Below, one piece after another: positions 9,060-64,000 of a stretch of DNA of 64,000 nt. The stretch covers positions 310,001-374,000 of the IMG/VR virus record IMGVR_UViG_3300046660_000488; one strand, given 5' to 3'. The notes beneath the pieces are model-generated. The model did not search any database, was not told where the DNA came from, and saw only the letters and a program-made list of their open reading frames with translations. A program made the translations under genes and the position numbers. How positions within the stretch are numbered: the stretch's first letter is position 1; every line of letters begins with the position of its first letter.

Positions 9060-9125
9060 TCTCGTTTACGACCTTGACTTCAGAGGGGTGATCTGGCACG
9101 CAAGAGGCTTGCCCTCGGAGTGCCT

Positions 9126-11127: not shown

Positions 11128-12275
11128 GAATCCTATCCGGCGTCCAGCCCACCGGCAACCTGCACCTTGGCAACTATCTCGGCGCCATCAAGCAGTTCGC
11201 CAAGCTCCAGCAGCCCGGCAACAAGTGCTTCTACAGCGTGGTCGATCTACATGCGATCACCGCTGGCAAGCACGATCCGAACGTGCTGGCCCAGCACACC
11301 CGCGAGATCGCGGCGGCGTACATCGCCTCGGGTGTGGACCCCAACCGCTCGACGATCTTCGTCCAGTCACAGGTTCCGGAAATCGCCGAGCTTCACTGGC
11401 TGCTGTGCAACGTCGCGCGCATGGGCTGGCTGGAACGGATGACGCAGTATCGGGAGAAGACCAACAGCGTCCCTCCCGCTGACCTGCGTGGCATCCTCAG
11501 CCGCGTCGAGAAAGTGCTGAAGGGATCGGGGAGCTACAACCTCGAACCGCTGGAAGGCAATGCCGGGACCGTCTTCAACCACAATGACGTGCTGGCCATG
11601 TACGACATGCTGTCGCGCGTCACCTCCAACAAGGAGGGCGCGAGCGTCGGTCTGTTCACCTATCCGGTGCTGATGGCCGCCGACATCCTGTCGGTCGGCG
11701 CCACGCACGTTCCGGTCGGTCATGACCAACGCCAGCACCTGAACTTGGCTCGCGACATCATCGAGAAGCTGAACACCGACTTCCTGATGGTCCGTGACAT
11801 CCCCGAAGCGCTGCACGTCGCCGAAGGCGCGCGCGTCATGTCGCTGAAGGATGGCACGCGCAAGATGTCCAAGAGCGATGCCGACGACGCTGGCCGGATC
11901 AACATGACCGACAGCGACGAGGTGATCGCCAAGAAGGTCCGCAAGGCGACGGCCGACAGCCTGCCGTTCCCTGAGCACGACGTTGACCTGAAGCCGGAAG
12001 TGGCCAACCTGATCTCGATCTATGCTGGGGTCTCTGGGCTGGCGCGTGAGGCGATCTTCGCCGAATTCGCTGGCAAGGGCTGGGGCGTGTTCAAACCGGC
12101 CCTGACGGACGTCCTGATCACCAACATCGGTCCGATCCGCAACCAGATGGAACGGCTGCTCAAGGACGAAGGCTTCCTCGACTATCTGCTCGGCGAAGGC
12201 GCGATGAAAGCGCGGGAAGAAGCCGCGCGCACCTTGGGCATGACCAAGCACATGATGGGCTTCTACGGTGCTTGA
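11124..12275 (+). CDS. trpS: tryptophanyl-tRNA synthetase
   Basis: MRILSGVQPTGNLHLGNYLG, YPVLMAADIL, VPVGHDQ, KMSKS. Confidence 0.95.
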   Translation: MRILSGVQPTGNLHLGNYLGAIKQFAKLQQPGNKCFYSVVDLHAITAGKHDPNVLAQHTREIAAAYIASGVDPNRSTIFVQSQVPEIAELHWLLCNVARMGWLERMTQYREKTNSVPPADLRGILSRVEKVLKGSGSYNLEPLEGNAGTVFNHNDVLAMYDMLSRVTSNKEGASVGLFTYPVLMAADILSVGATHVPVGHDQRQHLNLARDIIEKLNTDFLMVRDIPEALHVAEGARVMSLKDGTRKMSKSDADDAGRINMTDSDEVIAKKVRKATADSLPFPEHDVDLKPEVANLISIYAGVSGLAREAIFAEFAGKGWGVFKPALTDVLITNIGPIRNQMERLLKDEGFLDYLLGEGAMKAREEAARTLGMTKHMMGFYGA

Positions 12276-12375
12276 TCTGGCCAACCAAATCGCCGGTGTC
12301 AGTGTTGCGGTTATCACCGCCTCACTGGCATCCGGCTTTGCTGGTATTCGTTACATCGCCCGCAACTGGCGTTAG
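12268..12375 (+). CDS. 35 aa single-TM peptide ([35 protein letters not shown])
   Basis: Translated by hand; GTG overlaps trpS end and TAG overlaps prs stop; hydrophobic core then basic tail. Confidence 0.4.
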
Positions 12376-13286
12376 ATACTGAGGCGAGACACCGACTCTT
12401 CGTGAGCCGCCCGGCGGATCGCTTCGCCGAACACGTCAGCCACCGACACCACCCGGATTTTCTTTGGCAGGTCCGCCTGCGGGATCGTGTCGGTGATAAC
12501 CACGGTCTTGATTGGCGAAGCGATGATGCGCTCGCGGGCTGGGCCAGACAGCACCCCGTGGGTGACGTAGGCGCTGACCGAAGCCGCACCCTTGGCGAGA
12601 AGAGCGTCGGCCGCGTGGCAGAGCGTTCCGGCCGTATCGACGATGTCGTCGTACAGGATGCAGTCGAAGCCTTCGACGTCGCCGATGATGTTCATCACCT
12701 CGCTCTCGTTGGCCTTCTCGCGGCGCTTGTCCACGATGGCCATGCCGATGCCGAGCTTTCCGGCCAGACCACGGGCGCGCACGACGCCGCCGACGTCAGG
12801 GGAGACGACGAGCGGGTTCTTGTAGCTGCGCTCGATGTCGCGGGCCAGCGTCGGCATGGCGGCGAGGTTGTCCACCGGGATGTTGAAGAAGCCTTCGATC
12901 TGTCCGGCGTGCAGGTCCATGGTCAGGATGCGCTGGGCGCCCGCCGTGGTCAGGATGTCGGCGACCAGCTTGGCCGAGATCGCCGTGCGACCGCCTTTGC
13001 GATCCTGCCGGGCGTAGCCGAAGTAGGGGATGACGGCAGTGATCCGCTTGGTGCTGGCGCGCTTGAGCGCGTCGATGCAGATCAGAAGCTCCATTAGGTT
13101 GTCGTTGGCTGGATTGCTGGTCGATTGCATGACGTAGACGTCCTGCCCGCGCATGTTCTCGAAGATGCGGACGGAGATTTCCTTGTCGGAGAACGTCTTG
13201 ACCGTGGACTCACACAGACGGATGCCGAGATATTCGGCAACGGTCTCGGCGAAAGCCGGATTGGAATTGCCAGCCAACAGCTTCAT
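12372..13286 (-). CDS. prs: ribose-phosphate pyrophosphokinase (PRPP synthetase)
   Basis: [48 protein letters not shown]. Confidence 0.95.
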
Positions 13287-16180: not shown

Positions 16181-16416
16181 AGGATCGGCAGGTTCGTCTT
16201 CTCGACAAATTTGATTCTGTCTTCTATGTATCGAATGTAACGCTTGCGCTCTTCGTGACTTAGAGACCACGCTTCATCACGAGTGAGACCGCCACGCATG
16301 TGCCAACTCAGCGTAATGACGTGGTCAATCAGTTCCCTCTGTTGAGCGCGAAAGCTCCTGATCAACCGCTGAATATCGTTCGGGTCTGTTAGGCTCAGGA
16401 GCCTTGCTCGAAAAAA
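16177..16416 (-). CDS. gp51-like baseplate/tail assembly chaperone; may be translated as a frameshift extension of the upstream gene
   Basis: LSWHMRGGLTRDEAWSLSHEER...LPIL; no ATG between the upstream stop and the motif. Confidence 0.6.
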   Translation of the reverse strand, partial: FFRARLLSLTDPNDIQRLIRSFRAQQRELIDHVITLSWHMRGGLTRDEAWSLSHEERKRYIRYIEDRIKFVEKTNLPIL

Positions 16417-17522
16417 GTTGACGGGTTGAACTCGATCTCGGTTTCCCATTCGTGCTGGCAAGCCGTGCACGCCACGTGGATAGCCTTGTCGATGCCCTTG
16501 GTGTTGATCTCGCGCAGCTTGGCTTCGAGCTTGGAGGTCATTGACCGGCCGACGTTCTGGATGAAGCGGCCAATGGCCCCACGATCCGTCACGGTGGCTT
16601 CCGGGGTAACCAGCGCCACGATAGCCCCGATCATCGCGTTGGATTGCAGCGACGACAGGCGACGGAACGCGCGGTTACGAGCAGCAGAAATCTGAACCTC
16701 GTCGCCGGATGCTTCCGCGATCTGTAGGGATCGACCTTCCTCGTAGCTGGTCAGCGTGATGGTCGTCACCGTCTCCAGCGTATAGGGCTTGACATAGGCG
16801 GTAAGGCCCGGAGCCAGTTCGACCGGGTTCTGCTGATCTACATAGGTCATCGAGCCCATGACGGACGGCAGGTGGCACTCGAACGTGTGCTCGGCGCCGC
16901 AGGACGGGCAAGCAACCTCGATCTCCATGTTGTCGCCATACGATGCGGCGCGGATGGCCAGCAGCAGGACGTCAAGGTCCGGGCTCGACACGGCGCGCGG
17001 GTTTCGGATCGCCGGGACGCACGACTTCAGAAGTTCCTCGATAGCGTATCCGCTCATCAGGGCGTCGGGGTTCTTCATCAGAAGCTCGTCCTGAGCCCGC
17101 ATCGGGAAGATCGGCACTTCGTGGTTCAGGGCCGGGTTGTAGTCCCGTTGATCGAAGAACGCGCCACGGGTCGGGAGCATCACCGTCAGGCCGGGCACGC
17201 GATAGAAGCGCGCCAGCGGGTCGATGGCCGCCTGTTGAGCCTGATCCAGCGCGGCCAGTGCTTCAGCCGGAGACGTGAAGGGCTGCTCGCCGAACGCTGG
17301 GAACGACGGCGGAGCGCCCATGCCCGGAGGCGGAGCGAACGCTTGGGGCGCGGGCTGCGTGAACTCGGTCCGATGCTGCGGTTGCGGCTGTTGGACCTGT
17401 TGCGGACGCGGCGGCGGGATGTGAGGCGCGGCCGGGCGCTGCATGGCTTGGAACGGATGGGGCGGCGGAAGATCACCGTCACCGTAGTTCTCGTTGAATT
17501 CGTCGTCGGGGAATTGCGTCAT
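16395..17522 (-). CDS. T4 gp26-like baseplate hub assembly protein with Pro/Gln-rich N-terminus
   Basis: LARFYRVP...LPTRG...PIFPMRAQDELLMKNPDALMSG...SCVP; CPSC and CTAC pairs. Confidence 0.75.
   Translation of the reverse strand: MTQFPDDEFNENYGDGDLPPPHPFQAMQRPAAPHIPPPRPQQVQQPQPQHRTEFTQPAPQAFAPPPGMGAPPSFPAFGEQPFTSPAEALAALDQAQQAAIDPLARFYRVPGLTVMLPTRGAFFDQRDYNPALNHEVPIFPMRAQDELLMKNPDALMSGYAIEELLKSCVPAIRNPRAVSSPDLDVLLLAIRAASYGDNMEIEVACPSCGAEHTFECHLPSVMGSMTYVDQQNPVELAPGLTAYVKPYTLETVTTITLTSYEEGRSLQIAEASGDEVQISAARNRAFRRLSSLQSNAMIGAIVALVTPEATVTDRGAIGRFIQNVGRSMTSKLEAKLREINTKGIDKAIHVACTACQHEWETEIEFNPSTFFEQGS
16410..16416 (-). promoter_or_regulatory. candidate -1 frameshift heptamer T TTT TTC
   Basis: In frame in gp26-like gene; AGGCTC-CT-GAGCCT hairpin starts 5 nt downstream. 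Confidence 0.55.
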
Positions 17523-32143: not shown

Positions 32144-32935
32144 TTAGACTTCCGAACCGTAGAGGTCGAGGATTTCTTCGATGACCGGGTGACGTTCAAC
32201 GTCGCCTGCCTCGAACGAAACCACTTCCATGGCCGAGCTTCCGCGTGCGGCCAAACGGGTGGTGAAGTCCTTCAGACCGTTGTCGTGCAGACCACGGTCG
32301 TGCTGGGCGAGGTCGCCCGTGACGAACATGCGGCAGTTGTCGCCGATGCGCGTCAGGATCATCTTCATCTGGTTCGGGTTGGTGTTTTGCATTTCGTCGG
32401 CGAGAACGATGCAGTTTTTCATCGTTCGGCCGCGCATGTACGCGAGCGGTGCGATCTCGATGACTTCCTCTTCGAGCATCTTGTCGATCTGCTTGGGCGT
32501 GTAATAATCCTTGAACACGTCCATGATCGGGATGACCCACGGCGCCATTTTCTCGATCAACGTACCCGGCAGGAAACCGTGCTGCTCGTCAACCGACACC
32601 GCAGGGCGGGTCAGGATGACCTTGTCGATCTTGCCCTCTTGCAGGGACTTGATCGCGAACAGCGTTGCCAGAAGCGTCTTACCGCAGCCTGCCGGACCCA
32701 TCGCAAACACAATGTGCTTGGATTCGTCGTAGAGGGCGTCGATATAATTTTCCTGAGCAAGGTTGCGGGGTGTGATCGTGACGCGCTTTGCGCGGGACGA
32801 CTTGGCTTCATCAAAATCGACCACGTTGTCGCCAATTTGACGACGACGGTTCTTTTGATACTCGGGAGCATTACGCTCTTCCCGAGGATTAGGCTTGTTG
32901 GAACGCTTAGCGTTCCGGGCGAGGTGTCTAGCCAC
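32144..32935 (-). CDS. phoH: PhoH-like ATPase
   Basis: GPAGCGKT, LTRPAV, LAYMRGRT, DEMQN, TGDLAQHD; GTG start after GGAGG. Confidence 0.93.
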   Translation of the reverse strand: MARHLARNAKRSNKPNPREERNAPEYQKNRRRQIGDNVVDFDEAKSSRAKRVTITPRNLAQENYIDALYDESKHIVFAMGPAGCGKTLLATLFAIKSLQEGKIDKVILTRPAVSVDEQHGFLPGTLIEKMAPWVIPIMDVFKDYYTPKQIDKMLEEEVIEIAPLAYMRGRTMKNCIVLADEMQNTNPNQMKMILTRIGDNCRMFVTGDLAQHDRGLHDNGLKDFTTRLAARGSSAMEVVSFEAGDVERHPVIEEILDLYGSEV

Positions 32936-32973
32936 TTCTGCCTCCGTTAGGTGGTTTGTTAACCGCTCGAAAG

Positions 32974-32980
32974 TATTTAT
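32974..32980 (-). promoter_or_regulatory. late promoter motif ATAAATA
   Basis: Upstream of phoH. Confidence 0.55.
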
Positions 32981-33136
32981 AGGGAGGGGTATCCTCAATA
33001 GTACTGACATAATAACTACGGTGTTTGCCTATACGTGTCGGACCAGAAACTCTGCTCACCTAAGCTTCTGATCTACTTTAATAATACTTCCGTCACATAA
33101 TCCCGGCGATATAAAACGGAGGCAGAATTAGTTCGG

Positions 33137-46394: not shown

Positions 46395-47735
46395 TTACTT
46401 GGTCTCTTCGACGTAGGCGCCGTGCAGCGCGTCGGTGAACAGGGTTTCGAAATCGATGCCCTCGGGGATGCCGCCAGCGACCACCAGAGTGGGGCTGATG
46501 GACGACAGAAGCTCTTGTGCCGCTTCGATCACTTCGTCGCGGGTCACCGACCGGTAGCGGTCGAGCAGGACTTGGTCCGACTCCGCCTCGCCCTTGGCGA
46601 ACAGTTGGGTGGCGACCGAGTCCGTCACATAGTCCGGGTTACGGTTCTGGGACAGTTGCTGGAGGATGATCTGGTTGCGCGAGCGCGTCCAGTCGGCTTC
46701 GGTGACTTCGCCCTGCGCGATGCGAACCAGTTCGCTGATCGCCGTCTTCAGAAATTCGACGACGTTGCCGGTCGAGGCCGAACCCTTGATGACGAAGAGC
46801 GACAGGTCTGCGTTGCGGAGCAGGCCCGAGCCCACCGAATAACAGAGAGCCTTGCGCTCGCGGGTGTTCTGGAACAGCGGTGAGGACATGCCGCCGCCCA
46901 GCACGTTGGCCAACATGGCGTACTTGGTCAGCGACAGGTCAATCGAGCCCGGCGCCGGGAAGGCGACGTACATGTGCGATTGCTCGAAGCGGTCGTCCTC
47001 GTGGATGGTCACGCCGCCGACGTACTGGGCCGGTTCGATGGCGACGGCCGGAGCGCGCTCCAGATGGCCGAAGTACTTCTCGCCCATGGCGACCAGAGCG
47101 TCGTGGTCCACGTCACCGGCCGCGATCAGCAGCATGTGCTCCGGGTGGTAGAAAGTCTTGACGTAGTTGAACAGGTCGTCCTGCGTGAACGACATGACAT
47201 TTTCGGACGTGCCAAGGATTTCGCGGCCCAGCGGAGTGTTGCCGTAGGCCGTCAGGTCCAACTGGGCGCGGGCGATGTGCGAAATCTTGTCGCCGTACTC
47301 GGCGATCTCTTCGCAGACCACGCCCTTCTCGCGCTCGATCTCGTCCATCGGGAAGGTGGCGTGACAGACGATGTCGGCGAGGATTTCCACCGACTTCTCC
47401 ATGTGCTCGCTCAGGCCCTCGACCAGATAAGAAGTGGCGGCCTTGCCGGTGGCGGCATTCACGTAGCCGCCGAGCACTTCGATCTGTTCGGCGATTTCCT
47501 TGACGTTCCGGTGCTTCGTGCCCTTGAACAGCACGTGCTCCAGATAGTGGGTGATCCCGTTCAACTCGCTGGTCTCGTTGCGAGCGCCGACCTTCGTGTA
47601 GACCGTGACCTGAACCTCGCCCGGCGTGGGACGCACGGCGCTGACCACGCGCAACCCGTTCGGGAGCGTGGTGATGGTGACGCCTTCCTTGGCGGAGACG
47701 ATGGTGTCGGGTGCGGTCTGGGTCAGGTTGGTCAA
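46395..47735 (-). CDS. M16 family (pitrilysin/MPP-like) zinc peptidase
   Basis: TLPNGLRV, HYLEH inverted zinc motif, NAATG, EREKGVVCEEI, LGGGMSSPLFQ; TTG start after AGGAG. Confidence 0.92.
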   Translation of the reverse strand: MTNLTQTAPDTIVSAKEGVTITTLPNGLRVVSAVRPTPGEVQVTVYTKVGARNETSELNGITHYLEHVLFKGTKHRNVKEIAEQIEVLGGYVNAATGKAATSYLVEGLSEHMEKSVEILADIVCHATFPMDEIEREKGVVCEEIAEYGDKISHIARAQLDLTAYGNTPLGREILGTSENVMSFTQDDLFNYVKTFYHPEHMLLIAAGDVDHDALVAMGEKYFGHLERAPAVAIEPAQYVGGVTIHEDDRFEQSHMYVAFPAPGSIDLSLTKYAMLANVLGGGMSSPLFQNTRERKALCYSVGSGLLRNADLSLFVIKGSASTGNVVEFLKTAISELVRIAQGEVTEADWTRSRNQIILQQLSQNRNPDYVTDSVATQLFAKGEAESDQVLLDRYRSVTRDEVIEAAQELLSSISPTLVVAGGIPEGIDFETLFTDALHGAYVEETK

Positions 47736-47868
47736 AGGAACTCCTTGAAACTGAAAGAGCACGGTAGACTGAAAACACGATCTCGTCAACCAGTTTTACT
47801 CTGTGCTGTATAGATTTCTCTCAGAATAGCAGAGAGAAACGCCAAAACCAATTTCCACGTTTGGCCGC

Positions 47869-50055: not shown

Positions 50056-51258
50056 ATGATCTGGCCGTTCAATTCCCGTCGCAAAGTGGATGATCGCCGT
50101 GAGCGCGACATTCTCCGCGATCTGCGCGTGTTGGAAAGCCAGCACGCGCTGCTCGAAGCTGCGACGCAAACGGCCGATGCCGCGAATGTGGTCACCAACA
50201 GCCTGCGCGCCCGTCTTCAGGACAGCATTTCGCAGTTCGAGAACACGGCCCGCATCCTGAATGACGCTTTGGTCATCTGTGACCTTGAAGGCAAGGTTCA
50301 GGCGTTCAACCCAGCCGCTGAGCGCATGTTCAATCTCCCGGCTCGTGACGCACGCGATGCCTTCGTCGGCGACCTGCTGGAATGGGGCGACACCGCGCTG
50401 ACGGACATCGAGTACGTTTGGGAGCTACTGAGCCGCCTCGAAAAGGAAGACGACGACGGCGCCACCCTCAAAGGTGTAGCGTCTAATGGCCGCACCTTCC
50501 CCATCGACGTCAACCACACGCGCTTGGATCGCTCGGACAACTCGGCCATCGTCCTGCTGGTCATCCGCGACATCACGCCATGCGCTGACATCAAGGTCTC
50601 ACTGAAGAGCTACCGGTCGATCTTCGACTCGGCGTTCGACTGCATCCTCGTCATCGACAACGACGACATCGTCGCCGCCAACCCGGTCGCCTCGGAATTC
50701 TTCGGCTACAGCGCAGAAGAGCTTCTAAGCAAGCGTCTGGACGATCTGATCGTCACTGGCCGCCACGACCTCTCCAAGGCCTTCAGCACCGGTGACGACG
50801 CCGTGGACCTGAAAGGCAAGATCGCCGATCACGACGGTCACCAGATGGAAGTCACGTTCACCACCACCACGATCTGGTGGAACGGACGCCCGGCCGCACT
50901 GGTAACGATCAAGGACACCACGAGCGTGTACGTGCGCGCGCCGCAGATCGAGAACTTGATCTGCTGCTTCAACGACAAATTCAAGATCACCTTCGTGAAC
51001 GCGGCCTTCGCCTCGTTCTACGGTCTTGGGCGCGACAAACTGGTTGGGTCGGACATCCGCGCCCTACAGCCGGAGAACGACCGCAGCGCCTTCCTGATGC
51101 ACCTGAACGGGCTGACGCCACAAACGCCGAGCCGCCGCATGCAGCTTCGCACACGCGATCATGACGGCGCCATCTGCACGCAAGTGTGGACTGACAACGC
51201 GACCTTCGACGACGATGGCGTCGAGTATCAGCGTATCGGCCACGTCACCCGCGATTAA
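50056..51258 (+). CDS. coiled-coil plus three PAS domains, no output domain
   Basis: FNPAAERMF..IRDIT, ANPVASEFFGYS..IKDTT, VNAAFASFYG..VTRD; stop directly after third PAS. Confidence 0.88.
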   Translation: MIWPFNSRRKVDDRRERDILRDLRVLESQHALLEAATQTADAANVVTNSLRARLQDSISQFENTARILNDALVICDLEGKVQAFNPAAERMFNLPARDARDAFVGDLLEWGDTALTDIEYVWELLSRLEKEDDDGATLKGVASNGRTFPIDVNHTRLDRSDNSAIVLLVIRDITPCADIKVSLKSYRSIFDSAFDCILVIDNDDIVAANPVASEFFGYSAEELLSKRLDDLIVTGRHDLSKAFSTGDDAVDLKGKIADHDGHQMEVTFTTTTIWWNGRPAALVTIKDTTSVYVRAPQIENLICCFNDKFKITFVNAAFASFYGLGRDKLVGSDIRALQPENDRSAFLMHLNGLTPQTPSRRMQLRTRDHDGAICTQVWTDNATFDDDGVEYQRIGHVTRD

Positions 51259-53093: not shown

Positions 53094-54323
53094 TCACGCA
53101 TACGGGGCGTTGAGATAGGCCGCATGATCCTGAGCCTCGACAATCAGGGACGGCAGGTAGTTGTCCTTGCAGAATTTCAGGAAATGGACCCCGACGCCCT
53201 GCACCTTGGGCTTTTGGACAGCCTCGAACACAACCTCCGTCATCAGGTTCTTGATCCGGTCGGGCATCTGGGTGAGGTCGATCAGCGATTCGTTGATCTT
53301 GAACTCGGAACCCACCGTAACCTTTTCCTTGATCGGATCGCCGGTCTGCGGATCGAAACCGACGATCTTGTCCCACTCCGTCTGGAAGAAATTGTTCCAG
53401 ACGTAGTCCTTGGTCTTGCGGTCTTCCCAAGCTTCGCAGATGCCCGCGCGCTTGGATGACCCCTTGTAGAAGACGCCGGGGTAGGACGAGAACACGCTGT
53501 CGCCGACGTCGCCACGGATCAGCTTCACGAACAGGGCCTTACGCCACCATTCGGGCTCGATGGTGAACGAGAATTCTTCCCGAACAAACGGCTCCGGAAC
53601 ATACGCCACCGGCTCATACGACGGCTTCTTGACCTGTTTCTTCGCTTCGGCCGCGTCGTGGCGCTCGCGTTTCTTGACTTGTTTTTCGCGGTGCTTGATC
53701 TGCCGCTCGTCTTCCGCAAGCTCGTGCTTGGTGCGGGCTTCGGCGAACGTGCCCTTGATCGACACCTTGCCGCTGTCGGGCTTGATCGCGAACACCAGTT
53801 GTTCACCGGTCTCGACGCGGAACACGCCGTCCGTGGTCAGCAGGGTGTCGTCGAGGCCGTTGTAGATTTTGACCTTGGGGGACAGCAACTGCACGAAGTC
53901 GCTGTCGCTCGACAGGATGATGTGCTCGTCGTCCGGGTGTAGGGCGATCCAGTGCGCGATCCAGTCGTCGCCTTCCACGCCATCCTTCTGGAGGACGGTG
54001 CAGCGGGTCTTGTCGTTCAGGAATTCCTGAAAGTCGTTCATGACGTGCATGAACGCGGCTTCCTCTTCCTTTTCGGCCGGGGTCGCCTCCATCTTGTCCA
54101 GCTTCCGCTTGGACTTGTACTTGGGGTAGATGTCGTAGCGCCAGCTACGGCCTTCGCAGGTGAAGACGAAGTGATCCGTCTTGAACTCGCGGTGCAGCTT
54201 CCGCAGCGAGCGGAAGATGATGGTCAGAGCCAGACCCGCCTTCGTGAAGGCGTCGCCCTGTGCGGCGTGGCGGGCGCGATAAAACAGGTTTGCGACATCA
54301 ACAATCGCGTAGCGTCTGGACAT
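53094..54323 (-). CDS. rnh: T4-type RNase H (FEN-like 5'-3' exonuclease)
   Basis: IVDVANL, EGRSWR, EGDDWI, SSDSDFVQL, RGDVGD. Confidence 0.88.
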   Translation of the reverse strand: MSRRYAIVDVANLFYRARHAAQGDAFTKAGLALTIIFRSLRKLHREFKTDHFVFTCEGRSWRYDIYPKYKSKRKLDKMEATPAEKEEEAAFMHVMNDFQEFLNDKTRCTVLQKDGVEGDDWIAHWIALHPDDEHIILSSDSDFVQLLSPKVKIYNGLDDTLLTTDGVFRVETGEQLVFAIKPDSGKVSIKGTFAEARTKHELAEDERQIKHREKQVKKRERHDAAEAKKQVKKPSYEPVAYVPEPFVREEFSFTIEPEWWRKALFVKLIRGDVGDSVFSSYPGVFYKGSSKRAGICEAWEDRKTKDYVWNNFFQTEWDKIVGFDPQTGDPIKEKVTVGSEFKINESLIDLTQMPDRIKNLMTEVVFEAVQKPKVQGVGVHFLKFCKDNYLPSLIVEAQDHAAYLNAPYA

Positions 54324-54393
54324 GAATGGCCTCAAATAATGACCCCCATCTTAGGAGCCAATTAGAAGCCTGTCAAATTTTGGTTAACCAGAT

Positions 54394-57829: not shown

Positions 57830-58333
57830 TCAGTCTTGCTTGAACATCTTGAAGAGGGTCGCCGTAACGTCGTTCTCGAAACTGTAGACGGCGAAATTCG
57901 ACTTGATCTTTGGGGTGGGCGCGAAAATGGAATGGGTGGTGGTGATTTCGTACTGAACTGTCCAGCCGCCGCCTTTGCCTTGCGTCGCGATCCACAACGC
58001 ATCGCCTTCGAGCGCTCGTTTTTCGCCACAGTCGATCCGCACCTTGAACGGGAACGGTTCGGTTCGGATGACGAAATCGACCGCATGCTCAGCAGGTGGA
58101 TGGTAGTGCATCTTCCCACCGTCCTCAGACACGAACAGGATCGTGAATTCCGGTGGCAGGTGATCATGCAATTTGGCCATGCCCATCTGACGCGGGAGGA
58201 ACACGTGATCCTTCGTCACCGTGGGGTCAATCGGCTGGACGCCGACGATGGCCTTGGCGATGCGCTGGACTTCGCTCAGGACTTCGCTCAGGACTTCGTC
58301 TTCATCGTCAGGCAAATGTGAAGAATTCTGCAC
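57830..58333 (-). CDS. hypothetical protein (paralog family)
   Basis: C-terminus YSFENDVTATLFKMFKQD. Confidence 0.6.
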   Translation of the reverse strand: MQNSSHLPDDEDEVLSEVLSEVQRIAKAIVGVQPIDPTVTKDHVFLPRQMGMAKLHDHLPPEFTILFVSEDGGKMHYHPPAEHAVDFVIRTEPFPFKVRIDCGEKRALEGDALWIATQGKGGGWTVQYEITTTHSIFAPTPKIKSNFAVYSFENDVTATLFKMFKQD

Positions 58334-61190
58334 CCATTCTCTCCTTGGTTTCTTCCATATTCCACTTCAGCACGCCAAAGAGGTTGTTGAGCTTGTTGTC
58401 GATGATCGTGGTCTCCATCGCCTCGTGGTTGAAGGGCAAGTCCTTGAACCACTGCGGGATTTGCAGTTCGTCGATGGGATATGCCACTTCCGAGACCCCA
58501 AGCATGTTGTGCTTGAGCTTGCAGACGACGATCTTGGAGCCGTCGCCGATCCGCATGGAGTACTTGTCGTCGAAGGTTTTGCAGAGCTTGTTCCAGTTCA
58601 TGGCGGCCTCGACGTGCGAGACCTTGTTGACCTTGACCTTCGTGCCCTTGCGGAGCTTCAGCGCTTCTTGGAACGACAGGTCGTTCACGTACTGCTTGCG
58701 GCTGACGTAGTCCGCCAGCGCCGACACCTTCTTAGGCGCGCCCTTGTCCCAGCCGGGCTTCGTCTTGAAGTCCTTCCGGAAGGCTCGGATTTGGTCGAAG
58801 ATGTTCGCCTTATCGACGCCGCAAAGCAGGTCCATCAGCACCTTGGACAGGAATTCCTGCATGTACTTGGGCGTGTCGGCGCGCTTCAGGTCCAGACCCA
58901 TGACCTTGAGCTTGCCCGGCTTGCCGTCGATATCCAGACGGTGGCCGTCCTTGTCGTACATCAGCACCGCGTATTTCTTCTTCTTGATGAAGAGGCCCTT
59001 CGACGCCACCAGTTCGCGACCGGCCTTGATCAGCCCGCCGCGCTCTTCGCCAGTGTTGAAGGTCCGGTTCATGAATTCGGGGAACGTCGCGTTGCACTGC
59101 TCAGCGATCTGGTCGTACAGTTCGATGGTCTGATCGCGGGTCCAGCCCTCGACGTCCTTGAACAGCATCTTCGCCGTGAAATACGAGGAGTCCGTGTCCG
59201 AGTAGATGATCGCGTCGCCGTCGATCTGGTACGTGCCCGTGATGATCTCGTTGATCTTCGAGTTCATGTGACGCACGACCGACCGGCCGGTCAGGGTGAC
59301 CGACTGACCAAGGCGCTCGTCATAGAACCGCAGGCCTTCGTTAAGCAGGGCGCCGTACAGCGAGTTCAGCAGAATCTTACGAGCCTGCTGGCGCTGATTC
59401 CAGAAGCCTTCCCAGTAGATGCAGAGTTCCTTCTGCTCCGGGGTCAGGTCGCCGGTCAGGGGCAGGTTCACCTCTTGGACGAACGCGGCTTCCGCGTCCT
59501 TCAGGGGCTTGCCTTCCTTGCGCTTGGTGAAAGCCTCTTCCTTGGCCTGCATCTGCTTACGTTCGGAATACCACTTGGCCAGCAGTTGCGGGATGATGCC
59601 GCTCTTCTTGGTCGAGAAGATCGTTCCGTTGGCAGTGACGCAGAGCTTGTTCGCCGGGTTGAAGATGTAGTCGTAGAACGACAGGCCCGTGAACGAACGC
59701 GACGTGCCGTCCTCGAAATCGACAACGAACGGGGTGTCGTCGCGGCGGTGCATGGCGTCCACCTCGAAACAGGCGAACACCCCTTCCCACGCTTCGGCCC
59801 GCTTCTTGGGACCAAGCTCCAGCACCTTCTTGTTGATGAAATCCATCGTCGAGCCCAGACGAATCTGGCCAACGATGGTCTCAGGGCTCATGTTGAGCGA
59901 CCGGATCACGGACGGGTACAGCGAGTTGATGTCCACGCAGCCGATCTCGTCCCACAACCCAGTCTTGGGCGGGGCGACATAGGCGCCGACGACCGGCGTA
60001 CGGCCGTCAACTACAGGCGGAGCCGGGCCATCATCGTCGTCGTTCTCGTAGCCGAAGTTGTCCTTGAATTCTTCTTCCTTCAGGACGTTCTTGCGGTCGG
60101 GCACGACGAAACCCATCGCGTGCATTTCGTTGATGATCGCGGTCTCGACCAGCGACACCGACCCGAGCGTCGTCTTCAGCAGCACACAGTTGCCGTGTGC
60201 GACTTGGTTCGAAAGCTCGATGAAGCGCTTCTTCTTGTCGATCTTGTACAGCAGCAGGGTATCCTGCCGATTGTATTCGATGAACTTGTGGAAGTCCTTC
60301 TTGTACAGGTCGTCCAGCGTCCCTTGGTATGGGACCTTGTTCTCCTTCACTTCGATTTCACCAACGAAATCGAGGCGGTAGGAGTGAAGTTGCTGGGTGT
60401 TGTGCTTCTGGTAGAGGTCCAGATAGTCAAGGTGGACCCGGCCGACCAGATCGTAGGTCTTATGAGTCCGCTTGAACTTCATGTACTCGCGCTCGCGCGG
60501 GTACTGGCGCCACAGGCACAGGTCGCGCGTGTAGTCCTTGCCCAGCACCCTCGTCATGCGGTTGACGATGTAGGGAATGTCGAAGCCGGTTGAATTCCAG
60601 CCCGACAGCACGTCAACGTCTTCGATCAGGTCGATGAAAGTCTTCATCAGTTCACCTTCGTTGGTGAACAGGAAGGTGTCTTCGATGCTGTCGGCGATGG
60701 CCTGACCATCCTCGTGGGTGTAGGTCGGCGGAAGCAGGACGAGCGTGACCAGACGCGAGATCGAAGTCAGATAGACAGAGATCGCGGTGATGGCGCTGAA
60801 AGGGTCCACGGTGGTGGCCCACCCACGGTCGGGGTTCCAGTCCACCTCAATATCGAAGAAGCCGATGTTGAGGACAGGCGCTTCCACACCCATGTAATGC
60901 GTGGCCAGCGAGCGGAACACCGGGTTGATGTCCGACTCGAAGATTTTGGGCGCGCGCTTGTTGCCTGTGCCACCCTGCATTTTCTCCAACTCCTTGCGGA
61001 ACTTGCCGCCGTGGTTGGTCGAGTATTTCTTGCAGGGGTCGCCGAAAATTGACTGGTGGGAACCGGAGTTGGCTTCGTAGTAGAAGACATACTCGGCGTC
61101 GTGTTCCGTGAGCACACGTTGACCGTTGTGCCGCTCCGCCACCAGAATCTTGTCGTTCTTGCGGTCGTGAATGGCGTCAACGTAGCTCAT
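58308..61190 (-). CDS. family B DNA polymerase (T4 gp43-like)
   Basis: FDIE, WNSTGFDIPY, YNRQD, DINSLYPS, KILLNSLYG, YSDTDS, KKKYA; no intein seen. Confidence 0.96.
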   Translation of the reverse strand: MSYVDAIHDRKNDKILVAERHNGQRVLTEHDAEYVFYYEANSGSHQSIFGDPCKKYSTNHGGKFRKELEKMQGGTGNKRAPKIFESDINPVFRSLATHYMGVEAPVLNIGFFDIEVDWNPDRGWATTVDPFSAITAISVYLTSISRLVTLVLLPPTYTHEDGQAIADSIEDTFLFTNEGELMKTFIDLIEDVDVLSGWNSTGFDIPYIVNRMTRVLGKDYTRDLCLWRQYPREREYMKFKRTHKTYDLVGRVHLDYLDLYQKHNTQQLHSYRLDFVGEIEVKENKVPYQGTLDDLYKKDFHKFIEYNRQDTLLLYKIDKKKRFIELSNQVAHGNCVLLKTTLGSVSLVETAIINEMHAMGFVVPDRKNVLKEEEFKDNFGYENDDDDGPAPPVVDGRTPVVGAYVAPPKTGLWDEIGCVDINSLYPSVIRSLNMSPETIVGQIRLGSTMDFINKKVLELGPKKRAEAWEGVFACFEVDAMHRRDDTPFVVDFEDGTSRSFTGLSFYDYIFNPANKLCVTANGTIFSTKKSGIIPQLLAKWYSERKQMQAKEEAFTKRKEGKPLKDAEAAFVQEVNLPLTGDLTPEQKELCIYWEGFWNQRQQARKILLNSLYGALLNEGLRFYDERLGQSVTLTGRSVVRHMNSKINEIITGTYQIDGDAIIYSDTDSSYFTAKMLFKDVEGWTRDQTIELYDQIAEQCNATFPEFMNRTFNTGEERGGLIKAGRELVASKGLFIKKKKYAVLMYDKDGHRLDIDGKPGKLKVMGLDLKRADTPKYMQEFLSKVLMDLLCGVDKANIFDQIRAFRKDFKTKPGWDKGAPKKVSALADYVSRKQYVNDLSFQEALKLRKGTKVKVNKVSHVEAAMNWNKLCKTFDDKYSMRIGDGSKIVVCKLKHNMLGVSEVAYPIDELQIPQWFKDLPFNHEAMETTIIDNKLNNLFGVLKWNMEETKERMGAEFFTFA

Positions 61191-61219
61191 GAAATCGTAC
61201 CAGAGTTGGGAATGGGCAG

Positions 61220-61226
61220 TATTTAT
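61220..61226 (-). promoter_or_regulatory. late-type promoter motif ATAAATA
   Basis: Upstream of polymerase, just downstream of a terminator. Confidence 0.5.
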
Positions 61227-61231
61227 TGGCG

Positions 61232-61259
61232 GGGAGAGGGGCAAAATTTCCCCTCTCCC
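61232..61259 (-). terminator. probable terminator hairpin
   Basis: GGGAGAGGGG-N8-CCCCTCTCCC. Confidence 0.65.
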
Positions 61260-61283: not shown

Positions 61284-61559
61284 TTAGATAACCTCGCCGC
61301 CGCGACCGGTGACTTCGAGGATTTCGTCCACGATGTCGTGGTTTTCCTTCTCGGCCTGACGCGAGGCCTTGTAGGCGATGCGGGCGGCCTTCATCAGGTG
61401 GGCGGGCTTCCAGCCGAACTCTTCGGCCAGCGCCTTCGCCGAGTCCTTCAGGCCTGCCTTCAGGTCGTCGGTCTCTTGGAAAATCTTGGTCGAGGCGTCC
61501 ATGAACTGGCCGAGCTTGACGCGGTCGTTGGTCGAGAGGGTTTCAACGTCGATAGCCAT
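61284..61559 (-). CDS. DsbA/GapR-like double-stranded DNA-binding protein
   Basis: DDLKAGLKD..K.LAEEFG.KP..L.KAARIAYK helical pattern. Confidence 0.6.
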   Translation of the reverse strand: MAIDVETLSTNDRVKLGQFMDASTKIFQETDDLKAGLKDSAKALAEEFGWKPAHLMKAARIAYKASRQAEKENHDIVDEILEVTGRGGEVI

Positions 61560-61713
61560 GTGAAAATATCCGGCAAAAATGGTTTCAAGAAATCAGCCGG
61601 TGGAAATCCCCGGCTCACTTTCTGACCATATCGAACCGAAAAATTCAGCGCAAAATTTCGTTTACCAAGGCGGAGGGCTGGACATCGTTTCCCAGATTGC
61701 TACAGTGGCGTCC

Positions 61714-62001
61714 ATGGCAATTTCACATTACCTCGGGGTCGTCCTCGACCAGACAAGCTGGCCGCAGCCCGGTCACCGGATGCAGTTCACCGGCAAGGGT
61801 GGCTACGATGGCGAGATCGAGCATGCGTCCTCGAAATTCGAGCCGAACCAAATCCTGACCGTGAAGGAATTCGTGGTCGGCGGGTCGGCCAGCCGGGTCA
61901 TCTTCAATGAGATCGACGGCGGCTGGAATTCGGTCCTGTTCGAATGGCTGGACGATCCGCGTCCGCCCGAGGATGTGTCTCAATACGTGGACCCCGCCTG
62001 A
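61714..62001 (+). CDS. hypothetical protein
   Basis: Internal ATG of listed ORF; TGATG coupling to coaD. Confidence 0.5.
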   Translation: MAISHYLGVVLDQTSWPQPGHRMQFTGKGGYDGEIEHASSKFEPNQILTVKEFVVGGSASRVIFNEIDGGWNSVLFEWLDDPRPPEDVSQYVDPA

Positions 62002-62654
62002 TGGAAACCGTTGGCCTCTACGTCGGCTCGTTCGATCCGGTGACCCTTGGACACCTCGACATCGTCAGCAAAGCGATGAAGACCTTCGACAAGGTCATCG
62101 TCGGCAAGGGCTTCAACCCGAAGAAAAAACAATCCCTCCTGCATCCGGGCGTCGCAGCGGCTATGATCGCCCACGCCGCCAGAGAAGCGCTTGGCGTCGA
62201 ATTCGACACGCGAATCGCCAAGGGTGGTGAGATCGGCGAGGGCAAGGTCATCATCCGACATGACCGCAAGGACAAGCGATATCCCTCCACCGAGCAATAC
62301 CCTCGCGAAAACCTGCATCCGGCCTACACGTCGCTGGACGGCCGCCTGCACATCGGTGTCTACGAGGACGACATTTCGGCCTACGCAAAGCGCATGGGCG
62401 CCACCCATCTGGTGCGGGGCCTTCGGCAGGTCAGCGATTTCAACGACGAATTCACCCTGCACGGGGTGATGCGCGAGATTTCGCCTGAACTGATCCCGAT
62501 CCACATCATCTGCGACGCCAAATTCCTGCACGTCTCGTCGAGCACGGTGCGTGAACTGGCCAAGCTCGGCTACAACGACAACCTCGACTGGCTGGTTACA
62601 CCCACGGTCAAGGACATGGTGATCGACTGCACGGCGTCGGTGCTGCGCTGGTGA
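62001..62654 (+). CDS. coaD: phosphopantetheine adenylyltransferase-like nucleotidyltransferase
   Basis: YVGSFDPVTLGHLDIV, LVRGLRQVSDFNDEF, VSSSTVRELA. Confidence 0.85.
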   Translation: METVGLYVGSFDPVTLGHLDIVSKAMKTFDKVIVGKGFNPKKKQSLLHPGVAAAMIAHAAREALGVEFDTRIAKGGEIGEGKVIIRHDRKDKRYPSTEQYPRENLHPAYTSLDGRLHIGVYEDDISAYAKRMGATHLVRGLRQVSDFNDEFTLHGVMREISPELIPIHIICDAKFLHVSSSTVRELAKLGYNDNLDWLVTPTVKDMVIDCTASVLRW

Positions 62655-62917
62655 TCCATCGCGGCTTGCATACGCGAGAGCGGCAGGAGTCCAAGGGCTG
62701 GAAGAGCATCGCGTGGTGCTCCACGCCGGTCTATGCCGGGACAACCATGGTTGGCCGGGACGTGGAAGGCGGTGGCTGGTTCCGCACTTTCCAGAAGGGT
62801 GGCATGCTGTTCTACTACCACGGGGTCGATGACCACGGTGGCCCGTTCGACGGCGGACCCTGCAAAACCAGAGCCGCCGCCGCGCGGCTGGCGTCTCGCC
62901 TGTTTATGAAAACTTGA
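62651..62917 (+). CDS. hypothetical protein
   Basis: GTGA overlap. Confidence 0.5.
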   Translation: MIHRGLHTRERQESKGWKSIAWCSTPVYAGTTMVGRDVEGGGWFRTFQKGGMLFYYHGVDDHGGPFDGGPCKTRAAAARLASRLFMKT

Positions 62918-63134
62918 CCACAAGCCTGATGCCATACTGATCGTCGGTCGGAGGATCGCGCATCAAGCTGATCCGCGCGTTGGTCGGCTTTTGGGGCGGC
63001 GGCAGGTTCGCCACGTGGCGCTGTATGGCTTTCGTGACGAATGCGACGACGTTGATGCCATAGTGACGCTCAGCGTCCTCAACGGCTTCGGATGTGATCT
63101 GGAACGTGACGCCGTCTACGGTGTGTGTTTGCAT
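62904..63134 (-). CDS. hypothetical protein
   Basis: AGGAG RBS; 76 aa. Confidence 0.6.
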   Translation of the reverse strand: MQTHTVDGVTFQITSEAVEDAERHYGINVVAFVTKAIQRHVANLPPPQKPTNARISLMRDPPTDDQYGIRLVVKFS

Positions 63135-63148
63135 GGTGCTCTCCTACG

Positions 63149-63173
63149 AAAAAGGGAGGGCCGAAGCCCTCCC
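63149..63173 (-). terminator. intrinsic terminator
   Basis: GGGAGGGC-CGAA-GCCCTCCC with minus-strand T run after thyX. Confidence 0.75.
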
Positions 63174-63178
63174 GATCC

Positions 63179-64000
63179 TTATTTCTTCTTCTTGGTCTTG
63201 CCGATTTGAACAGGCGGTGTCTGGGGCGCGGTGTTGACCAGCAACTCAACCGCCTTGGGAAGGATTTCTTCCTCAAGCCTCTTGCTGGCGGCGGCCATCG
63301 ACTTGGTCAGTTCGCCGTAGGCGGGAAGGCCCCATTGCGTCGCGAATTCGCGAAGCTCACGGGGCGACATTTCGTACTTGTCGGCGAAGGCCTTATCCGA
63401 GCCCGCTTCAAGAAGCGCGTCGGTCCACCAGACCTTCGGCGCGCTCGGGCACGCCAGCAGGGCCTTCAGCAGCGAAGTCTCCATCCGCGAGTTGTGGGTC
63501 GCTTGGCGGATGTAATCCTCGAAAGCCTGAACCGACTCGGGGAACAGCGGCTGGATCAGGTCATAGATCGCGTTGGCGACGTCGCGGATTTCCCGCTGAG
63601 CATGCGGGTCCATACGCAGACGCAGAAGGTGGAACAGGTTGTGGAGGTCTTGCTTCCAGTACAGTTCCGTGTAGTTGCCGGTCGGTAGGATCGTGCGGGC
63701 CAGTTCGCGAGCGATGCCGCCGAAATCGTCGCTCAGCAGCGGGTCGGCTGGATCATACGGATCGCACCAGACATCGCGCTTGTTTTCTCCGCGATCACCA
63801 AGCAGGGCCTTGTAGATGTCGTAGGACGTGCGATTGGCTTGCTCGATCATCCAACGAACGCCGGTCTTATCCTCGTCCGAGAGGTCACCGGAGCGGCCCT
63901 GTTTGTTGTCCTTGGACTGGGGCGCGATGTAATCGGGCTCGGGCATGTAGAATTCGTCGGTCATGACCGAGTAACGACCCGAGTACTCGTTCAGGCTGGC
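63179..64000 (-). CDS. thyX: flavin-dependent thymidylate synthase, 5' truncated by window edge
   Basis: SLNEYSGRYS at window end, ARELARTILP, HAQREIR. Confidence 0.92.
   Translation of the reverse strand, partial: ASLNEYSGRYSVMTDEFYMPEPDYIAPQSKDNKQGRSGDLSDEDKTGVRWMIEQANRTSYDIYKALLGDRGENKRDVWCDPYDPADPLLSDDFGGIARELARTILPTGNYTELYWKQDLHNLFHLLRLRMDPHAQREIRDVANAIYDLIQPLFPESVQAFEDYIRQATHNSRMETSLLKALLACPSAPKVWWTDALLEAGSDKAFADKYEMSPRELREFATQWGLPAYGELTKSMAAASKRLEEEILPKAVELLVNTAPQTPPVQIGKTKKKK

What the first reader, a model, noticed from the sequence alone, without database searches (positions are those of the whole stretch)
62001..62654. Phage CoaD-like adenylyltransferase with a large insertion
Seen: CoaD motifs at both ends, but 217 aa long with an extra segment of about 50 residues (LGVEFDTRIAKGG...HPAYTSLDG) before the RGLR motif; cellular CoaD is about 160 aa. 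CoA synthesis is not a usual phage function. Inference: altered specificity (NMN or another acceptor), loss of CoA feedback inhibition, or replacement of a host enzyme hit by defence.
Basis: partly seen in the sequence, partly recalled or inferred. Interest (0 to 1): 0.6.

Follow-up and report, generated by a model that had tools for sequence, protein, structure and literature searches.

The report
Megaphage CoaD with an oversized surface loop
A 578-kb soil phage carries an intact coenzyme-A enzyme gene (CoaD) whose about 50 extra residues sit in a surface loop that varies in length across its phage relatives, so it looks like an ordinary CoA enzyme, probably paired with a phage CoaE, not one with a new substrate.

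Summary
Window 62001-62654 (+) encodes a 217-aa CoaD/PPAT homologue. It is 51 residues longer than canonical CoaD between the HxGH histidine and the RGLR motif.

The surplus fills the loop between helix 2 and strand 3. A published PPAT crystal structure shows this loop solvent-exposed on the hexamer, away from the active site. The protein belongs to a distinct clade of large-phage CoaDs plus second CoaD copies in some alphaproteobacteria. That loop is already enlarged and variable across the clade (+3 to +36). The window has the largest version, and its middle matches nothing else.

All catalytic and phosphate-binding residues are kept. The phage also encodes CoaE. In seven related viral or metagenomic contigs, coaE abuts or overlaps coaD.

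An NMN role is unlikely, because the genome has its own NAMPT and NMNAT/Nudix genes. Two pantetheine-pocket residues (Ec L73, N106) are replaced across the clade, so kinetics or feedback may differ. That is untested and unrelated to the loop.

Verdict: a new variant of a known kind, of modest interest.

The parts
62001..62654 (+). coaD-like gene, 217 aa plus stop (P0001): phosphopantetheine adenylyltransferase of the phage/alphaproteobacterial-paralogue clade
   Evidence: ORF and translation. TIGR01510 105.8 bits against a cut-off of 103.3. 34 PPAT chains by phmmer, best E 1e-18. AF2 model pLDDT 86, Foldseek TM 0.94 to E. coli PPAT 6b7a.
62193..62345 (+). Enlarged helix2-strand3 loop (residues 65-115), net +51 residues over canonical CoaD. 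Its ends (GVEFD; SLDGRLH) resemble those of clade relatives. The middle (about residues 70-108, window 62208-62324) has no detectable relative.
   Evidence: Split alignments to PPAT structures. Alignment A1. Spacing counts. pLDDT 51-69 across residues 71-110. A search with residues 60-116 alone found only itself. No other copy in the genome, and GC3 0.73 against 0.79/0.86 in the flanks.
62025..62054 (+). GSFDPVTLGH (residues 9-18): nucleotidyltransferase HxGH motif with S10 and H18
   Evidence: Invariant in 120 relatives and shared with generic CoaD. Roles of T10/H18 taken from PMC12784347.
62124..62126 (+). K42, ligand of the 4'-phosphate of phosphopantetheine
   Evidence: Invariant in the clade and in generic CoaD. 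Role from PMC12784347.
62415..62426 (+). RGLR (residues 139-142), equivalent to E. coli R88-R91
   Evidence: Alignment offset of 51. Invariant. R88 and R91 are essential in H. pylori PPAT.
62535..62543 (+). SSS (residues 179-181), equivalent to E. coli S128-S130, ATP beta/gamma-phosphate ligands
   Evidence: Role.
61579..62001 (+). Upstream 140-aa ORF (P0121) with a phage T4 Y07B-type domain of unknown function. Its stop overlaps the coaD start, and it holds the same position in relative L002.
   Evidence: phrog_8472 E 1.6e-10. Precomputed PF27001. Atlas neighbours are Phage_T4_Y07B clusters, score 0.94. tblastn 35% identity over 133 aa in L002, just upstream of coaD.
61284..61559 (-). 91-aa ORF, phage family phrog_12534 (weak likeness to the T4 DsbA transcription regulator)
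   Evidence: 79% identical in L002.
58308..61244 (-). Family B DNA polymerase, 978 aa
   Evidence: blastn hits to annotated DNA polymerase of Sinorhizobium phage Phosso and Agrobacterium phage Atu_ph07. 70% identical in L002.
63179..63964 (-). ThyX (flavin-dependent thymidylate synthase); the frame is open to the window end
   Evidence: PF02511 E 7.7e-22. phrog_85. 58% identical in L002.

Best explanation
This is a working phosphopantetheine adenylyltransferase (CoaD) of a clade carried by very large phages. Together with the phage's own dephospho-CoA kinase (CoaE, 89 kb away in this genome), it would convert host 4'-phosphopantetheine to dephospho-CoA and then to CoA during infection. That would supply the last two steps of the pathway independently of the host enzymes.

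The roughly 50 extra residues are the extreme case of a loop between helix 2 and strand 3 that drifts in length and sequence throughout this clade. In solved PPAT hexamers this loop is solvent-exposed on the outside, at the edge of the sheet opposite the active site. The surplus most likely projects into solvent as a flexible element. At most it tunes dynamics or stability, and it does not change the substrate.

Shown here:
- identity, fold and motif conservation;
- the loop position in the sequence;
- variability of the loop among relatives;
- presence of CoaE, and coaE-coaD pairing in relatives.

Inferred:
- enzymatic activity and hexamer formation;
- solvent exposure of this particular loop;
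- the physiological purpose.
For: Identity and fold:
- CoaD profile over its cut-off, and only PPAT chains among significant PDB hits.
- Fold TM 0.94 to E. coli PPAT.
- Y7, S10, F11, H18, K42, R139/G140/R142 (Ec R88/G89/R91), D146, E150 and S179-181 are kept and invariant in 120 relatives. Their roles come from PMC12784347.

Pathway context:
- The genome encodes CoaE (PF01121, 101.5 bits). It lacks CoaBC, PanK, ACP and PPTase.
- coaE ends at or overlaps the coaD start in L003, L007, L008, L014, L015, L128 and L129.

The loop:
- HxGH-to-RGLR spacing is mostly 70 in generic CoaD, 73-106 in the clade and 121 here.
- Phage genes in the same polB / small ORF / Y07B / coaD / thyX arrangement have +19 (L002 = P0010) and +33 (P0014), with unrelated loop sequence.
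- In the literature the H2-S3 region is 'generally not conserved'. A 5-aa insertion there in Methylocapsa PPAT is a solvent-exposed strand-loop, and the hexamer survives its deletion (PMC12981448).
- The loop has low pLDDT and little secondary structure.
- Its codon bias resembles the rest of the gene, and it has no copy elsewhere in the genome.
Against: - No activity was measured.
- Two residues named in the literature as conserved pantetheine-arm contacts are replaced. Ec L73 (98% L in generic CoaD) is D124 here and S in 88% of the clade. Ec N106 (100% N in generic) is M157 here and A in 71% of the clade (contacts from PMC3764209).
- Five alphaproteobacterial genomes that hold a clade member also keep a canonical CoaD. 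The clade may therefore do something the housekeeping enzyme does not.
- In this genome coaE is not next to coaD. Several coaD-bearing phages lack coaE.
- The Methylocapsa study shows that even 5 residues in this loop can alter activity at a distance, so 'neutral' is not safe.
- The homotrimer prediction gave no verdict.
Confidence: 0.6

Rival explanations
1. The enlarged loop is a gained functional module. It could be a docking site for a phage or host protein, or an allosteric element that alters regulation (for example CoA feedback or temperature response) while the chemistry remains PPAT.
For: It is the longest loop seen among about 215 sequences measured. It is kept in frame with gene-like GC3. 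A 5-aa insertion at this very site in Methylocapsa PPAT acts allosterically on the hexamer core (PMC12981448). The gene is translationally coupled to a conserved Y07B-type ORF.
Against: The middle of the loop is not conserved in any relative. Phage genes at the same genomic position carry unrelated loop sequences of other lengths. The loop has low model confidence, no recognisable domain and no cysteine or metal motif. Fast turnover of length and sequence fits relaxed constraint better than a conserved interface.
Confidence: 0.2
2. The clade, including this protein, has a different or additional substrate. Candidates are another phosphorylated acceptor, NMN/NaMN, or 5'-triphosphate RNA that it caps with phosphopantetheine (CoA-RNA).
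For: Invariant canonical residues lining the pantetheine arm are replaced clade-wide (Ec L73, N106; also R51, F117). Cells with a clade member keep a canonical CoaD as well. E. coli PPAT can cap pppA-RNA in vitro (PMC10761072). The gene sits among replication and nucleotide-metabolism genes.
Against: The ligands of the 4'-phosphate and of ATP are all kept. The coaE-coaD overlapping pair in seven relatives points to free CoA as the product, since CoaE needs a free 3'-OH. NMNAT models score far below their cut-offs. The phage has a dedicated NMNAT/Nudix beside NAMPT.
Confidence: 0.12
3. The gene is a decaying or inactive copy, and the loop expansion reflects loss of constraint on a protein that no longer works.
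For: The branch is long (0.92) on the tree. The TIGR01510 score is barely over the cut-off. coaE is unlinked in this genome.
Against: The frame is intact at 217 codons, and every catalytic residue is retained. GC3 of 0.73-0.86 is well above the genomic GC of 0.59. The core is confidently folded. Overlap with the upstream ORF is preserved. There are no variants at word depth 178.
Confidence: 0.05

Closest known systems
Bacterial phosphopantetheine adenylyltransferase CoaD/PPAT (TIGR01510; e.g. E. coli, PDB 1B6T, 6B7A)
   Same: The fold matches (TM 0.94). HxGH, K42, RGLR and SSS motifs are all present. The profile score is over the curated cut-off.
   Different: Identity is only 22-26%. The H2-S3 loop is 51 residues longer. 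Ec L73, N106, R51 and F117 are replaced in a clade-specific way. On the tree it falls in a separate clade with 100/99 support.
CoaD annotated in Caulobacter (Bertelyvirus C1, C2, J4, RB23, BL47) and Brevundimonas (Marchewka, Bambus, Gurke and others) jumbo phages
   Same: They belong to the same clade, with 33-37% identity over the whole length in most records. They are carried by phages of 300-357 kb that infect alphaproteobacteria.
   Different: Those proteins are 162-166 aa with spacing of about 73. They lie in a different gene neighbourhood. No coaE was found in the two records searched.
coaE-coaD overlapping pair of IMG/VR megaphages and related metagenomic contigs (L003, L007, L008, L014, L015, L128, L129)
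   Same: The CoaD clade is the same (39-52% identity). Both CoA-finishing enzymes are phage-encoded.
   Different: There the two genes overlap. Here they lie 89 kb apart, and the gene overlapping coaD upstream is a Y07B-type ORF. Their loops are 73-97 against 121.
Methylocapsa palsarum PPAT with the 5-residue SCRLS insertion (PMC12981448)
   Same: The insertion is at the same place, between helix H2 and strand S3. It is solvent-exposed on the hexamer and remote from the active site.
   Different: It is 5 residues against 51. It sits in a canonical housekeeping CoaD, and its function (cold activity) has been tested. Nothing has been tested here.
Phage NAD+ salvage module (NAMPT plus NMNAT/Nudix)
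   Same: The logic would be the same: a phage rebuilding a cofactor from a late intermediate. Such a module is present in this same genome.
   Different: The enzymes and cofactor differ. No link of CoaD/CoaE to defence is known to me, and none was found here.

Membership tests
Bacterial CoaD / PPAT (TIGR01510, EC 2.7.7.3) | Scores above the curated equivalog cut-off | tested here: met
   105.8 bits against 103.3. The margin is small because the match is split by the loop. Short-loop clade members in genomes score 116-138 bits.
Bacterial CoaD / PPAT (TIGR01510, EC 2.7.7.3) | Nucleotidyltransferase alpha/beta fold with five parallel strands and an HxGH motif | tested here: met
   The AF2 model has strands 4-9, 31-37, 116-121, 136-141 and 165-170. 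Top Foldseek hits are all PPAT, TM 0.85-0.94 by target. T15-x-G17-H18 is invariant.
Bacterial CoaD / PPAT (TIGR01510, EC 2.7.7.3) | Ligands of the 4'-phosphate of phosphopantetheine (Ec T/S10, K42, R88) | tested here: met
   S10, K42 and R139 are invariant in 120 relatives. Roles.
Bacterial CoaD / PPAT (TIGR01510, EC 2.7.7.3) | ATP phosphate ligands (Ec R91, S128-S130) | tested here: met
   R142 and S179-S181 are present.
Bacterial CoaD / PPAT (TIGR01510, EC 2.7.7.3) | Conserved pantetheine-arm contacts (Ec L73, L/M74, N106) | tested here: not met
   D124 stands for L73 and M157 for N106. The clade has S (88%) and A (71%) where 66 generic CoaDs have L (98%) and N (100%). I125 stands for M/L74, a conservative change. 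The contact list is from PMC3764209.
Bacterial CoaD / PPAT (TIGR01510, EC 2.7.7.3) | Homohexamer (dimer of trimers) | tested here: inconclusive
   The three-copy prediction scored 0.36 against a mark of 0.42, which gives no verdict.
Bacterial CoaD / PPAT (TIGR01510, EC 2.7.7.3) | Pathway context: works with dephospho-CoA kinase | tested here: met
   CoaE is present in the same genome. coaE abuts coaD in seven related contigs.
Bacterial CoaD / PPAT (TIGR01510, EC 2.7.7.3) | Catalyses ATP + 4'-phosphopantetheine to dephospho-CoA + PPi | not testable with these tools
   Needs an enzyme assay.
NMN/NaMN adenylyltransferase (NadD, NadR, NadM) | Scores above family cut-offs over the whole domain | tested here: not met
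   The best score is 27 bits against a cut-off of 112, and it covers only residues 2-71, the shared HxGH region. phrog_3462 gives E 0.0046 over residues 2-34.
Phage/alphaproteobacterial CoaD paralogue clade (phrog_29208 in part) | Groups with the clade on a tree and shares its signature residues (K24, H136, N148, G155, H168, H177, T182, W197) | tested here: met
   The clade has 100/99 support, and the window pairs with L002 at 97/91. The signature residues are present. phrog_29208 gives E 4.2e-16.

The most novel reading that the evidence does not exclude
Very large phages of alphaproteobacteria carry a two-enzyme 'CoA finishing' module. It consists of a phage-type CoaD with a remodelled pantetheine pocket plus CoaE, and it would rebuild CoA from 4'-phosphopantetheine. 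That would let the phage escape host feedback control or counter a host response that lowers CoA, much as phage NAMPT/NMNAT modules restore NAD+. Under this reading, the fast-evolving H2-S3 loop, at its largest in this phage, is the surface on which host or phage factors act.
Probability: 0.12. Interest if true: 0.7.

Novelty: new variant of a known kind. Interest (0 to 1): 0.3.

Why it matters
If the enzyme is active, this phage supplies the last two steps of CoA synthesis itself. It also has NAD salvage genes, a PRPP synthetase and two aminoacyl-tRNA synthetases. That fits the picture of megaphages taking over cofactor supply.

Three points could be followed up:
- There is a distinct CoaD clade shared by large phages and a few alphaproteobacteria that also keep a normal CoaD.
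- Two normally invariant pocket residues are replaced across that clade.
- coaE and coaD are tightly coupled in many relatives.

The oversized loop is a natural series (+3 to +51) at a site where a 5-residue insertion is already known to act at a distance. It could serve as a test set for how much this enzyme tolerates or exploits surface insertions. On present evidence the loop is not a sign of a new function.

Tried and rejected
- NMNAT reading: rejected. NMNAT models score far below their cut-offs, and a separate NAMPT plus NMNAT/Nudix pair lies at G000:C1:248781-251280.
- Homology of the loop itself: a word search scored on residues 60-116 alone found only the protein itself (7 candidates). 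tblastn and blastn of the loop against the 578-kb genome found no other copy.
- Origin by internal duplication: an 11-nt exact in-frame repeat (62138 and 62312, LHP/LHP) and two weak repeats were seen. Local alignment against codon-shuffled controls gave p = 0.065 for DNA and 0.62 for protein. This is not supported.
- Intron or structured RNA: there is no Rfam match near any gathering score. The loop-coding RNA folds no better than shuffles, z = -0.32.
- Upstream ORF as a degraded CoaE: rejected. It is a T4 Y07B-type protein.
- Homotrimer prediction: no verdict (0.36 against a mark of 0.42). It is not used as evidence either way.
- Promoter and terminator scan: one promoter-like site against 0.7 expected, which is uninformative.
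- Conserved neighbours of the cellular paralogues: none were found. The contexts are ordinary chromosomal ones and differ between genomes.
- Microcystis phage MaAM05 coaD hit: set aside, because its neighbours are ribosomal protein genes, nusG and secE.
- The exhaustive representative search was not run. It was flagged as costly, and the two word searches already bear on absence of relatives. Caveat: only the best 120 of 557 hits were listed, so a weakly scoring long-loop relative cannot be excluded.
- A family look-up for PF27001 failed because the local Pfam copy lacks it.

Full report
**What is there.**
- The window is bases 310001-374000 of a 578,292-bp IMG/VR virus record with direct terminal repeats, rated 100% complete.
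- At 62001-62654 on the + strand lies an ATG-started ORF of 217 codons.
- Its ATG overlaps the TGA of the upstream ORF (61579-62001) by one base.
- A longer in-frame start at 61944 is unlikely, because relatives begin within a few residues of the 62001 start.
- A 61.9-kb Logan contig from a rhizosphere metagenome, word depth 178, covers 61500-63200 without a single difference or indel. The extra segment is therefore not a quirk of one assembly, though that sample may be the record's source.
- A second soil metagenome holds short pieces of a relative about 91% identical. These pieces do not cover the loop, which proves nothing either way.

**Identity.**
- The protein matches Pfam CTP_transf_like (48 bits) and the CoaD equivalog TIGR01510 at 105.8 bits against a cut-off of 103.3. 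The TIGR01510 match is in two stretches.
- All 34 PDB sequences found at E <= 1e-9 are phosphopantetheine adenylyltransferases.
- An AlphaFold2 model built on 120 relatives has mean pLDDT 86.
- Its best structural matches are PPATs, with TM 0.94 by target to E. coli PPAT.
- NMN/NaMN adenylyltransferase models reach at most 27 bits against cut-offs of 112-409. They match only the N-terminal HxGH region that all these transferases share.

**Where the surplus sits.**
- phmmer aligns residues 4-56 with E. coli PPAT 4-57 and residues 113-188 with E. coli 62-137. The net surplus of 51 residues therefore lies at one site.
- In the model, helix 2 is residues 49-64 and strand 3 is residues 116-121. Residues 71-110 between them have pLDDT 51-69 and almost no regular structure.
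- This is the helix-to-strand connection at the N-terminal edge of the parallel sheet. In a Rossmann-type fold that edge lies opposite the ligand-binding edge (established knowledge).
- A 2026 crystallographic study of Methylocapsa palsarum PPAT describes this H2-S3 region as generally not conserved.
  - It shows that a 5-residue insertion there forms a solvent-exposed strand-loop on the outside of the dimer-of-trimers hexamer.
  - The hexamer survives deletion of that insertion.
  - Cold activity falls through a long-range effect on helix 4 (PMC12981448).

**The loop is variable in the whole clade.** I measured the spacing from the HxGH histidine to the RGLR motif.

| Set | Spacing (residues) |
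|---|---|
| 60 generic CoaDs from genomes | mostly 70, range 69-77 |
| 119 nearest relatives | 73-106, mode 85 |
| Viral and paralogue loci | 73-97 |
| This protein | 121 |

- The next largest are P0007 (106) and P0014 (103).
- P0014 lies on a phage contig of up to 323 kb in the same arrangement as the window: polB, a small ORF, a small + strand ORF overlapping coaD, coaD, thyX.
- The 10.4-kb contig L002 shares that arrangement. Its polB is 70% identical, the 91-aa ORF 79%, the Y07B ORF 35%, CoaD 45% and ThyX 58%. Its spacing is 89.
- Phage genes at the same genomic position thus carry +19, +33 and +51 residues.
- Their loop ends resemble one another: G-[VF]-x-[FI]-D after helix 2, and L-D-G-R-L-[HE]-I-G before strand 3. 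Their middles are unrelated.
- A search scored on residues 60-116 alone found nothing but the query among 5.8 billion clustered proteins.
- The loop has no other copy in the genome. Its GC3 is 0.73, against 0.79 and 0.86 in the flanks and a genome GC of 0.59.
- It shows no significant internal duplication and no sign of an intron or structured RNA.

**The clade.**
- On a maximum-likelihood tree of 63 sequences, the phage proteins and a set of alphaproteobacterial proteins form one clade with 100/99 support. The alphaproteobacterial set comes from Phenylobacterium, Caulobacter, Tateyamaria, Reyranella, Sphingomonas, Rhizomicrobium and Acetobacteraceae.
- This clade is separate from generic CoaDs.
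- The cellular members nest among phage members under midpoint rooting, and the window pairs with L002 at 97/91.
- Each of the five cellular genomes tested holds two CoaD homologues. One is canonical at 190-198 bits. The other is the clade member at 116-138 bits.
- The clade members in cells lie in ordinary chromosomal contexts that differ between genomes.

**Residues.** Within the clade all residues with assigned catalytic or phosphate-binding roles are invariant. These are Y7, S10, F11, H18, K42, R139/G140/R142, D146, E150 and S179-181 (roles from PMC12784347). The clade differs from generic CoaD at several otherwise near-invariant positions.

| E. coli position | Generic CoaD | Clade | This protein |
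|---|---|---|---|
| N106 | N, 100% | A, 71% | M157 |
| L73 | L, 98% | S, 88% | D124 |
| R51 | R, 95% | S, 65% | A52 |
| F117 | F, 94% | H, 92% | H168 |
| R24 | R, 95% | K, 95% | K24 |

L73 and N106 are listed as conserved contacts of the pantetheine arm (PMC3764209). This is the only sequence evidence for altered binding. It belongs to the clade, not to the loop.

**Pathway context.**
- The genome encodes a dephospho-CoA kinase at C1:461472-461990 (PF01121, 101.5 bits).
- No CoaBC, PanK (two families), acyl carrier protein or phosphopantetheinyl transferase was detected.
- In five IMG/VR loci (L003, L007, L008, L014, L015) and two Logan contigs (L128, L129), coaE ends at or overlaps the coaD start.
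- Two further viral records have coaE 25 kb away from coaD.
- Five further viral records (three rated 100% complete, one 90%, one a 34% fragment) and the two cultured jumbo phages tested have coaD without coaE.
- The pairing argues that the clade makes dephospho-CoA for CoaE.
- An NMNAT role is further disfavoured. The genome has NAMPT and a 428-aa NMNAT/Nudix protein side by side, and a PRPP synthetase lies in the window.

**Neighbourhood.**
- coaD and the Y07B-type ORF form a two-gene + strand unit. It is set between - strand genes: polB and a 91-aa ORF on one side, a 76-aa ORF and thyX on the other.
- The upstream ORF carries the T4 Y07B domain of unknown function. Nothing ties it to CoA.

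**Interpretation.**
- The most likely reading (0.6) is a working phage PPAT that acts with the phage CoaE. Its oversized H2-S3 loop would be a tolerated, flexible surface element that may tune dynamics.
- A gained regulatory or docking role for the loop (0.2) is not excluded, given the Methylocapsa precedent. The lack of any conservation in the middle of the loop speaks against it.
- A changed substrate for the clade (0.12), including RNA capping as shown for E. coli PPAT in vitro (PMC10761072), rests only on the pocket substitutions and the paralogy.
- Decay (0.05) is unlikely, given the intact motifs and codon bias.

**Novelty.**
- Phage coaD is already annotated in jumbo phages, and coaD/coaE are listed among viral auxiliary genes (PMC11097641).
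- Three things appear not to have been described in the papers I could search:
  - the distinct phage/paralogue clade with its pocket changes;
  - the coaE-coaD coupling;
  - the graded loop series, of which this is the extreme.

**Limits.**
- The homotrimer prediction gave no verdict.
- I had no model coordinates, so the loop's position on the hexamer is inferred from topology and the literature.
- Only 120 of 557 hits were listed in the full-length search.
- The exhaustive protein search was not run.

Noticed in passing
G000:C1:248781-251280 (outside the window; loci L021, L022), and window 12372-13286 (-): The phage has a complete NAD salvage set. NAMPT (PF04095, 110 bits) lies next to a 428-aa NMNAT/Nudix protein, and a ribose-phosphate pyrophosphokinase (PRPP synthetase) lies in the window.
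   Followed up: partly
G000:C1:461472-461990 (-), locus L119:1447-2055: Dephospho-CoA kinase CoaE (202 aa, PF01121 101.8 bits) lies 89 kb from coaD. Its neighbours have no Pfam match.
   Followed up: partly
window 9120-10418 (+) and 11124-12275 (+): Two class I aminoacyl-tRNA synthetase genes of the Trp/Tyr type (PF00579, 219 and 223 bits) lie close together.
   Followed up: no
L021:1978-2649 (-) = G000:C1 about 251557-252228: The phage encodes a ROS/MucR-type regulator (PF05443, 119 bits). I know this family mainly from alphaproteobacteria. Taken with the blastn hits to Sinorhizobium and Agrobacterium megaphages and the rhizosphere source, it points to an alphaproteobacterial host.
   Followed up: no
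window 50056-51258 (+), 46395-47789 (-), 32144-33010 (-), 53094-54335 (-), 16395-17522 (-): Other recognisable genes in the window are a protein with several PAS domains, an M16 (insulinase-type) peptidase, PhoH, a 5'-3' exonuclease and a T4-type baseplate protein. Many long ORFs have no Pfam match.
   Followed up: no
Genomes G001-G005 (loci L103-L112): Five alphaproteobacterial genomes each carry two CoaD homologues. One is canonical, and one belongs to the phage clade, which on the tree nests among phage sequences. Gene exchange between large phages and these bacteria is likely, but the direction is not established.
   Followed up: partly
L003:4801-5367 (-), and the contig of P0014: GIY-YIG/NUMOD3 homing-endonuclease genes sit next to the coaE-coaD pair in one megaphage and next to thyX in another. 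Mobile elements visit this neighbourhood.
   Followed up: no
L121 (MW495066.1, Microcystis phage MaAM05, 32394-40843): The coaD of this 'phage' record is flanked by rplA, rplK, nusG, secE, a tRNA-Trp gene and trxB. It looks like bacterial chromosome rather than phage DNA.
   Followed up: no
window 61579-62001 (+): The ORF coupled to coaD carries the T4 Y07B domain (PF27001), which is absent from the local Pfam copy. It holds the position that coaE holds in other megaphages, but it is unrelated to CoaE.
   Followed up: partly
window 61988-62122 and 62466-62882: A soil metagenome from another study (X2) holds short contigs about 91% identical to the ends of coaD and its downstream spacer. A close relative of this phage therefore exists in another sample.
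   Followed up: no
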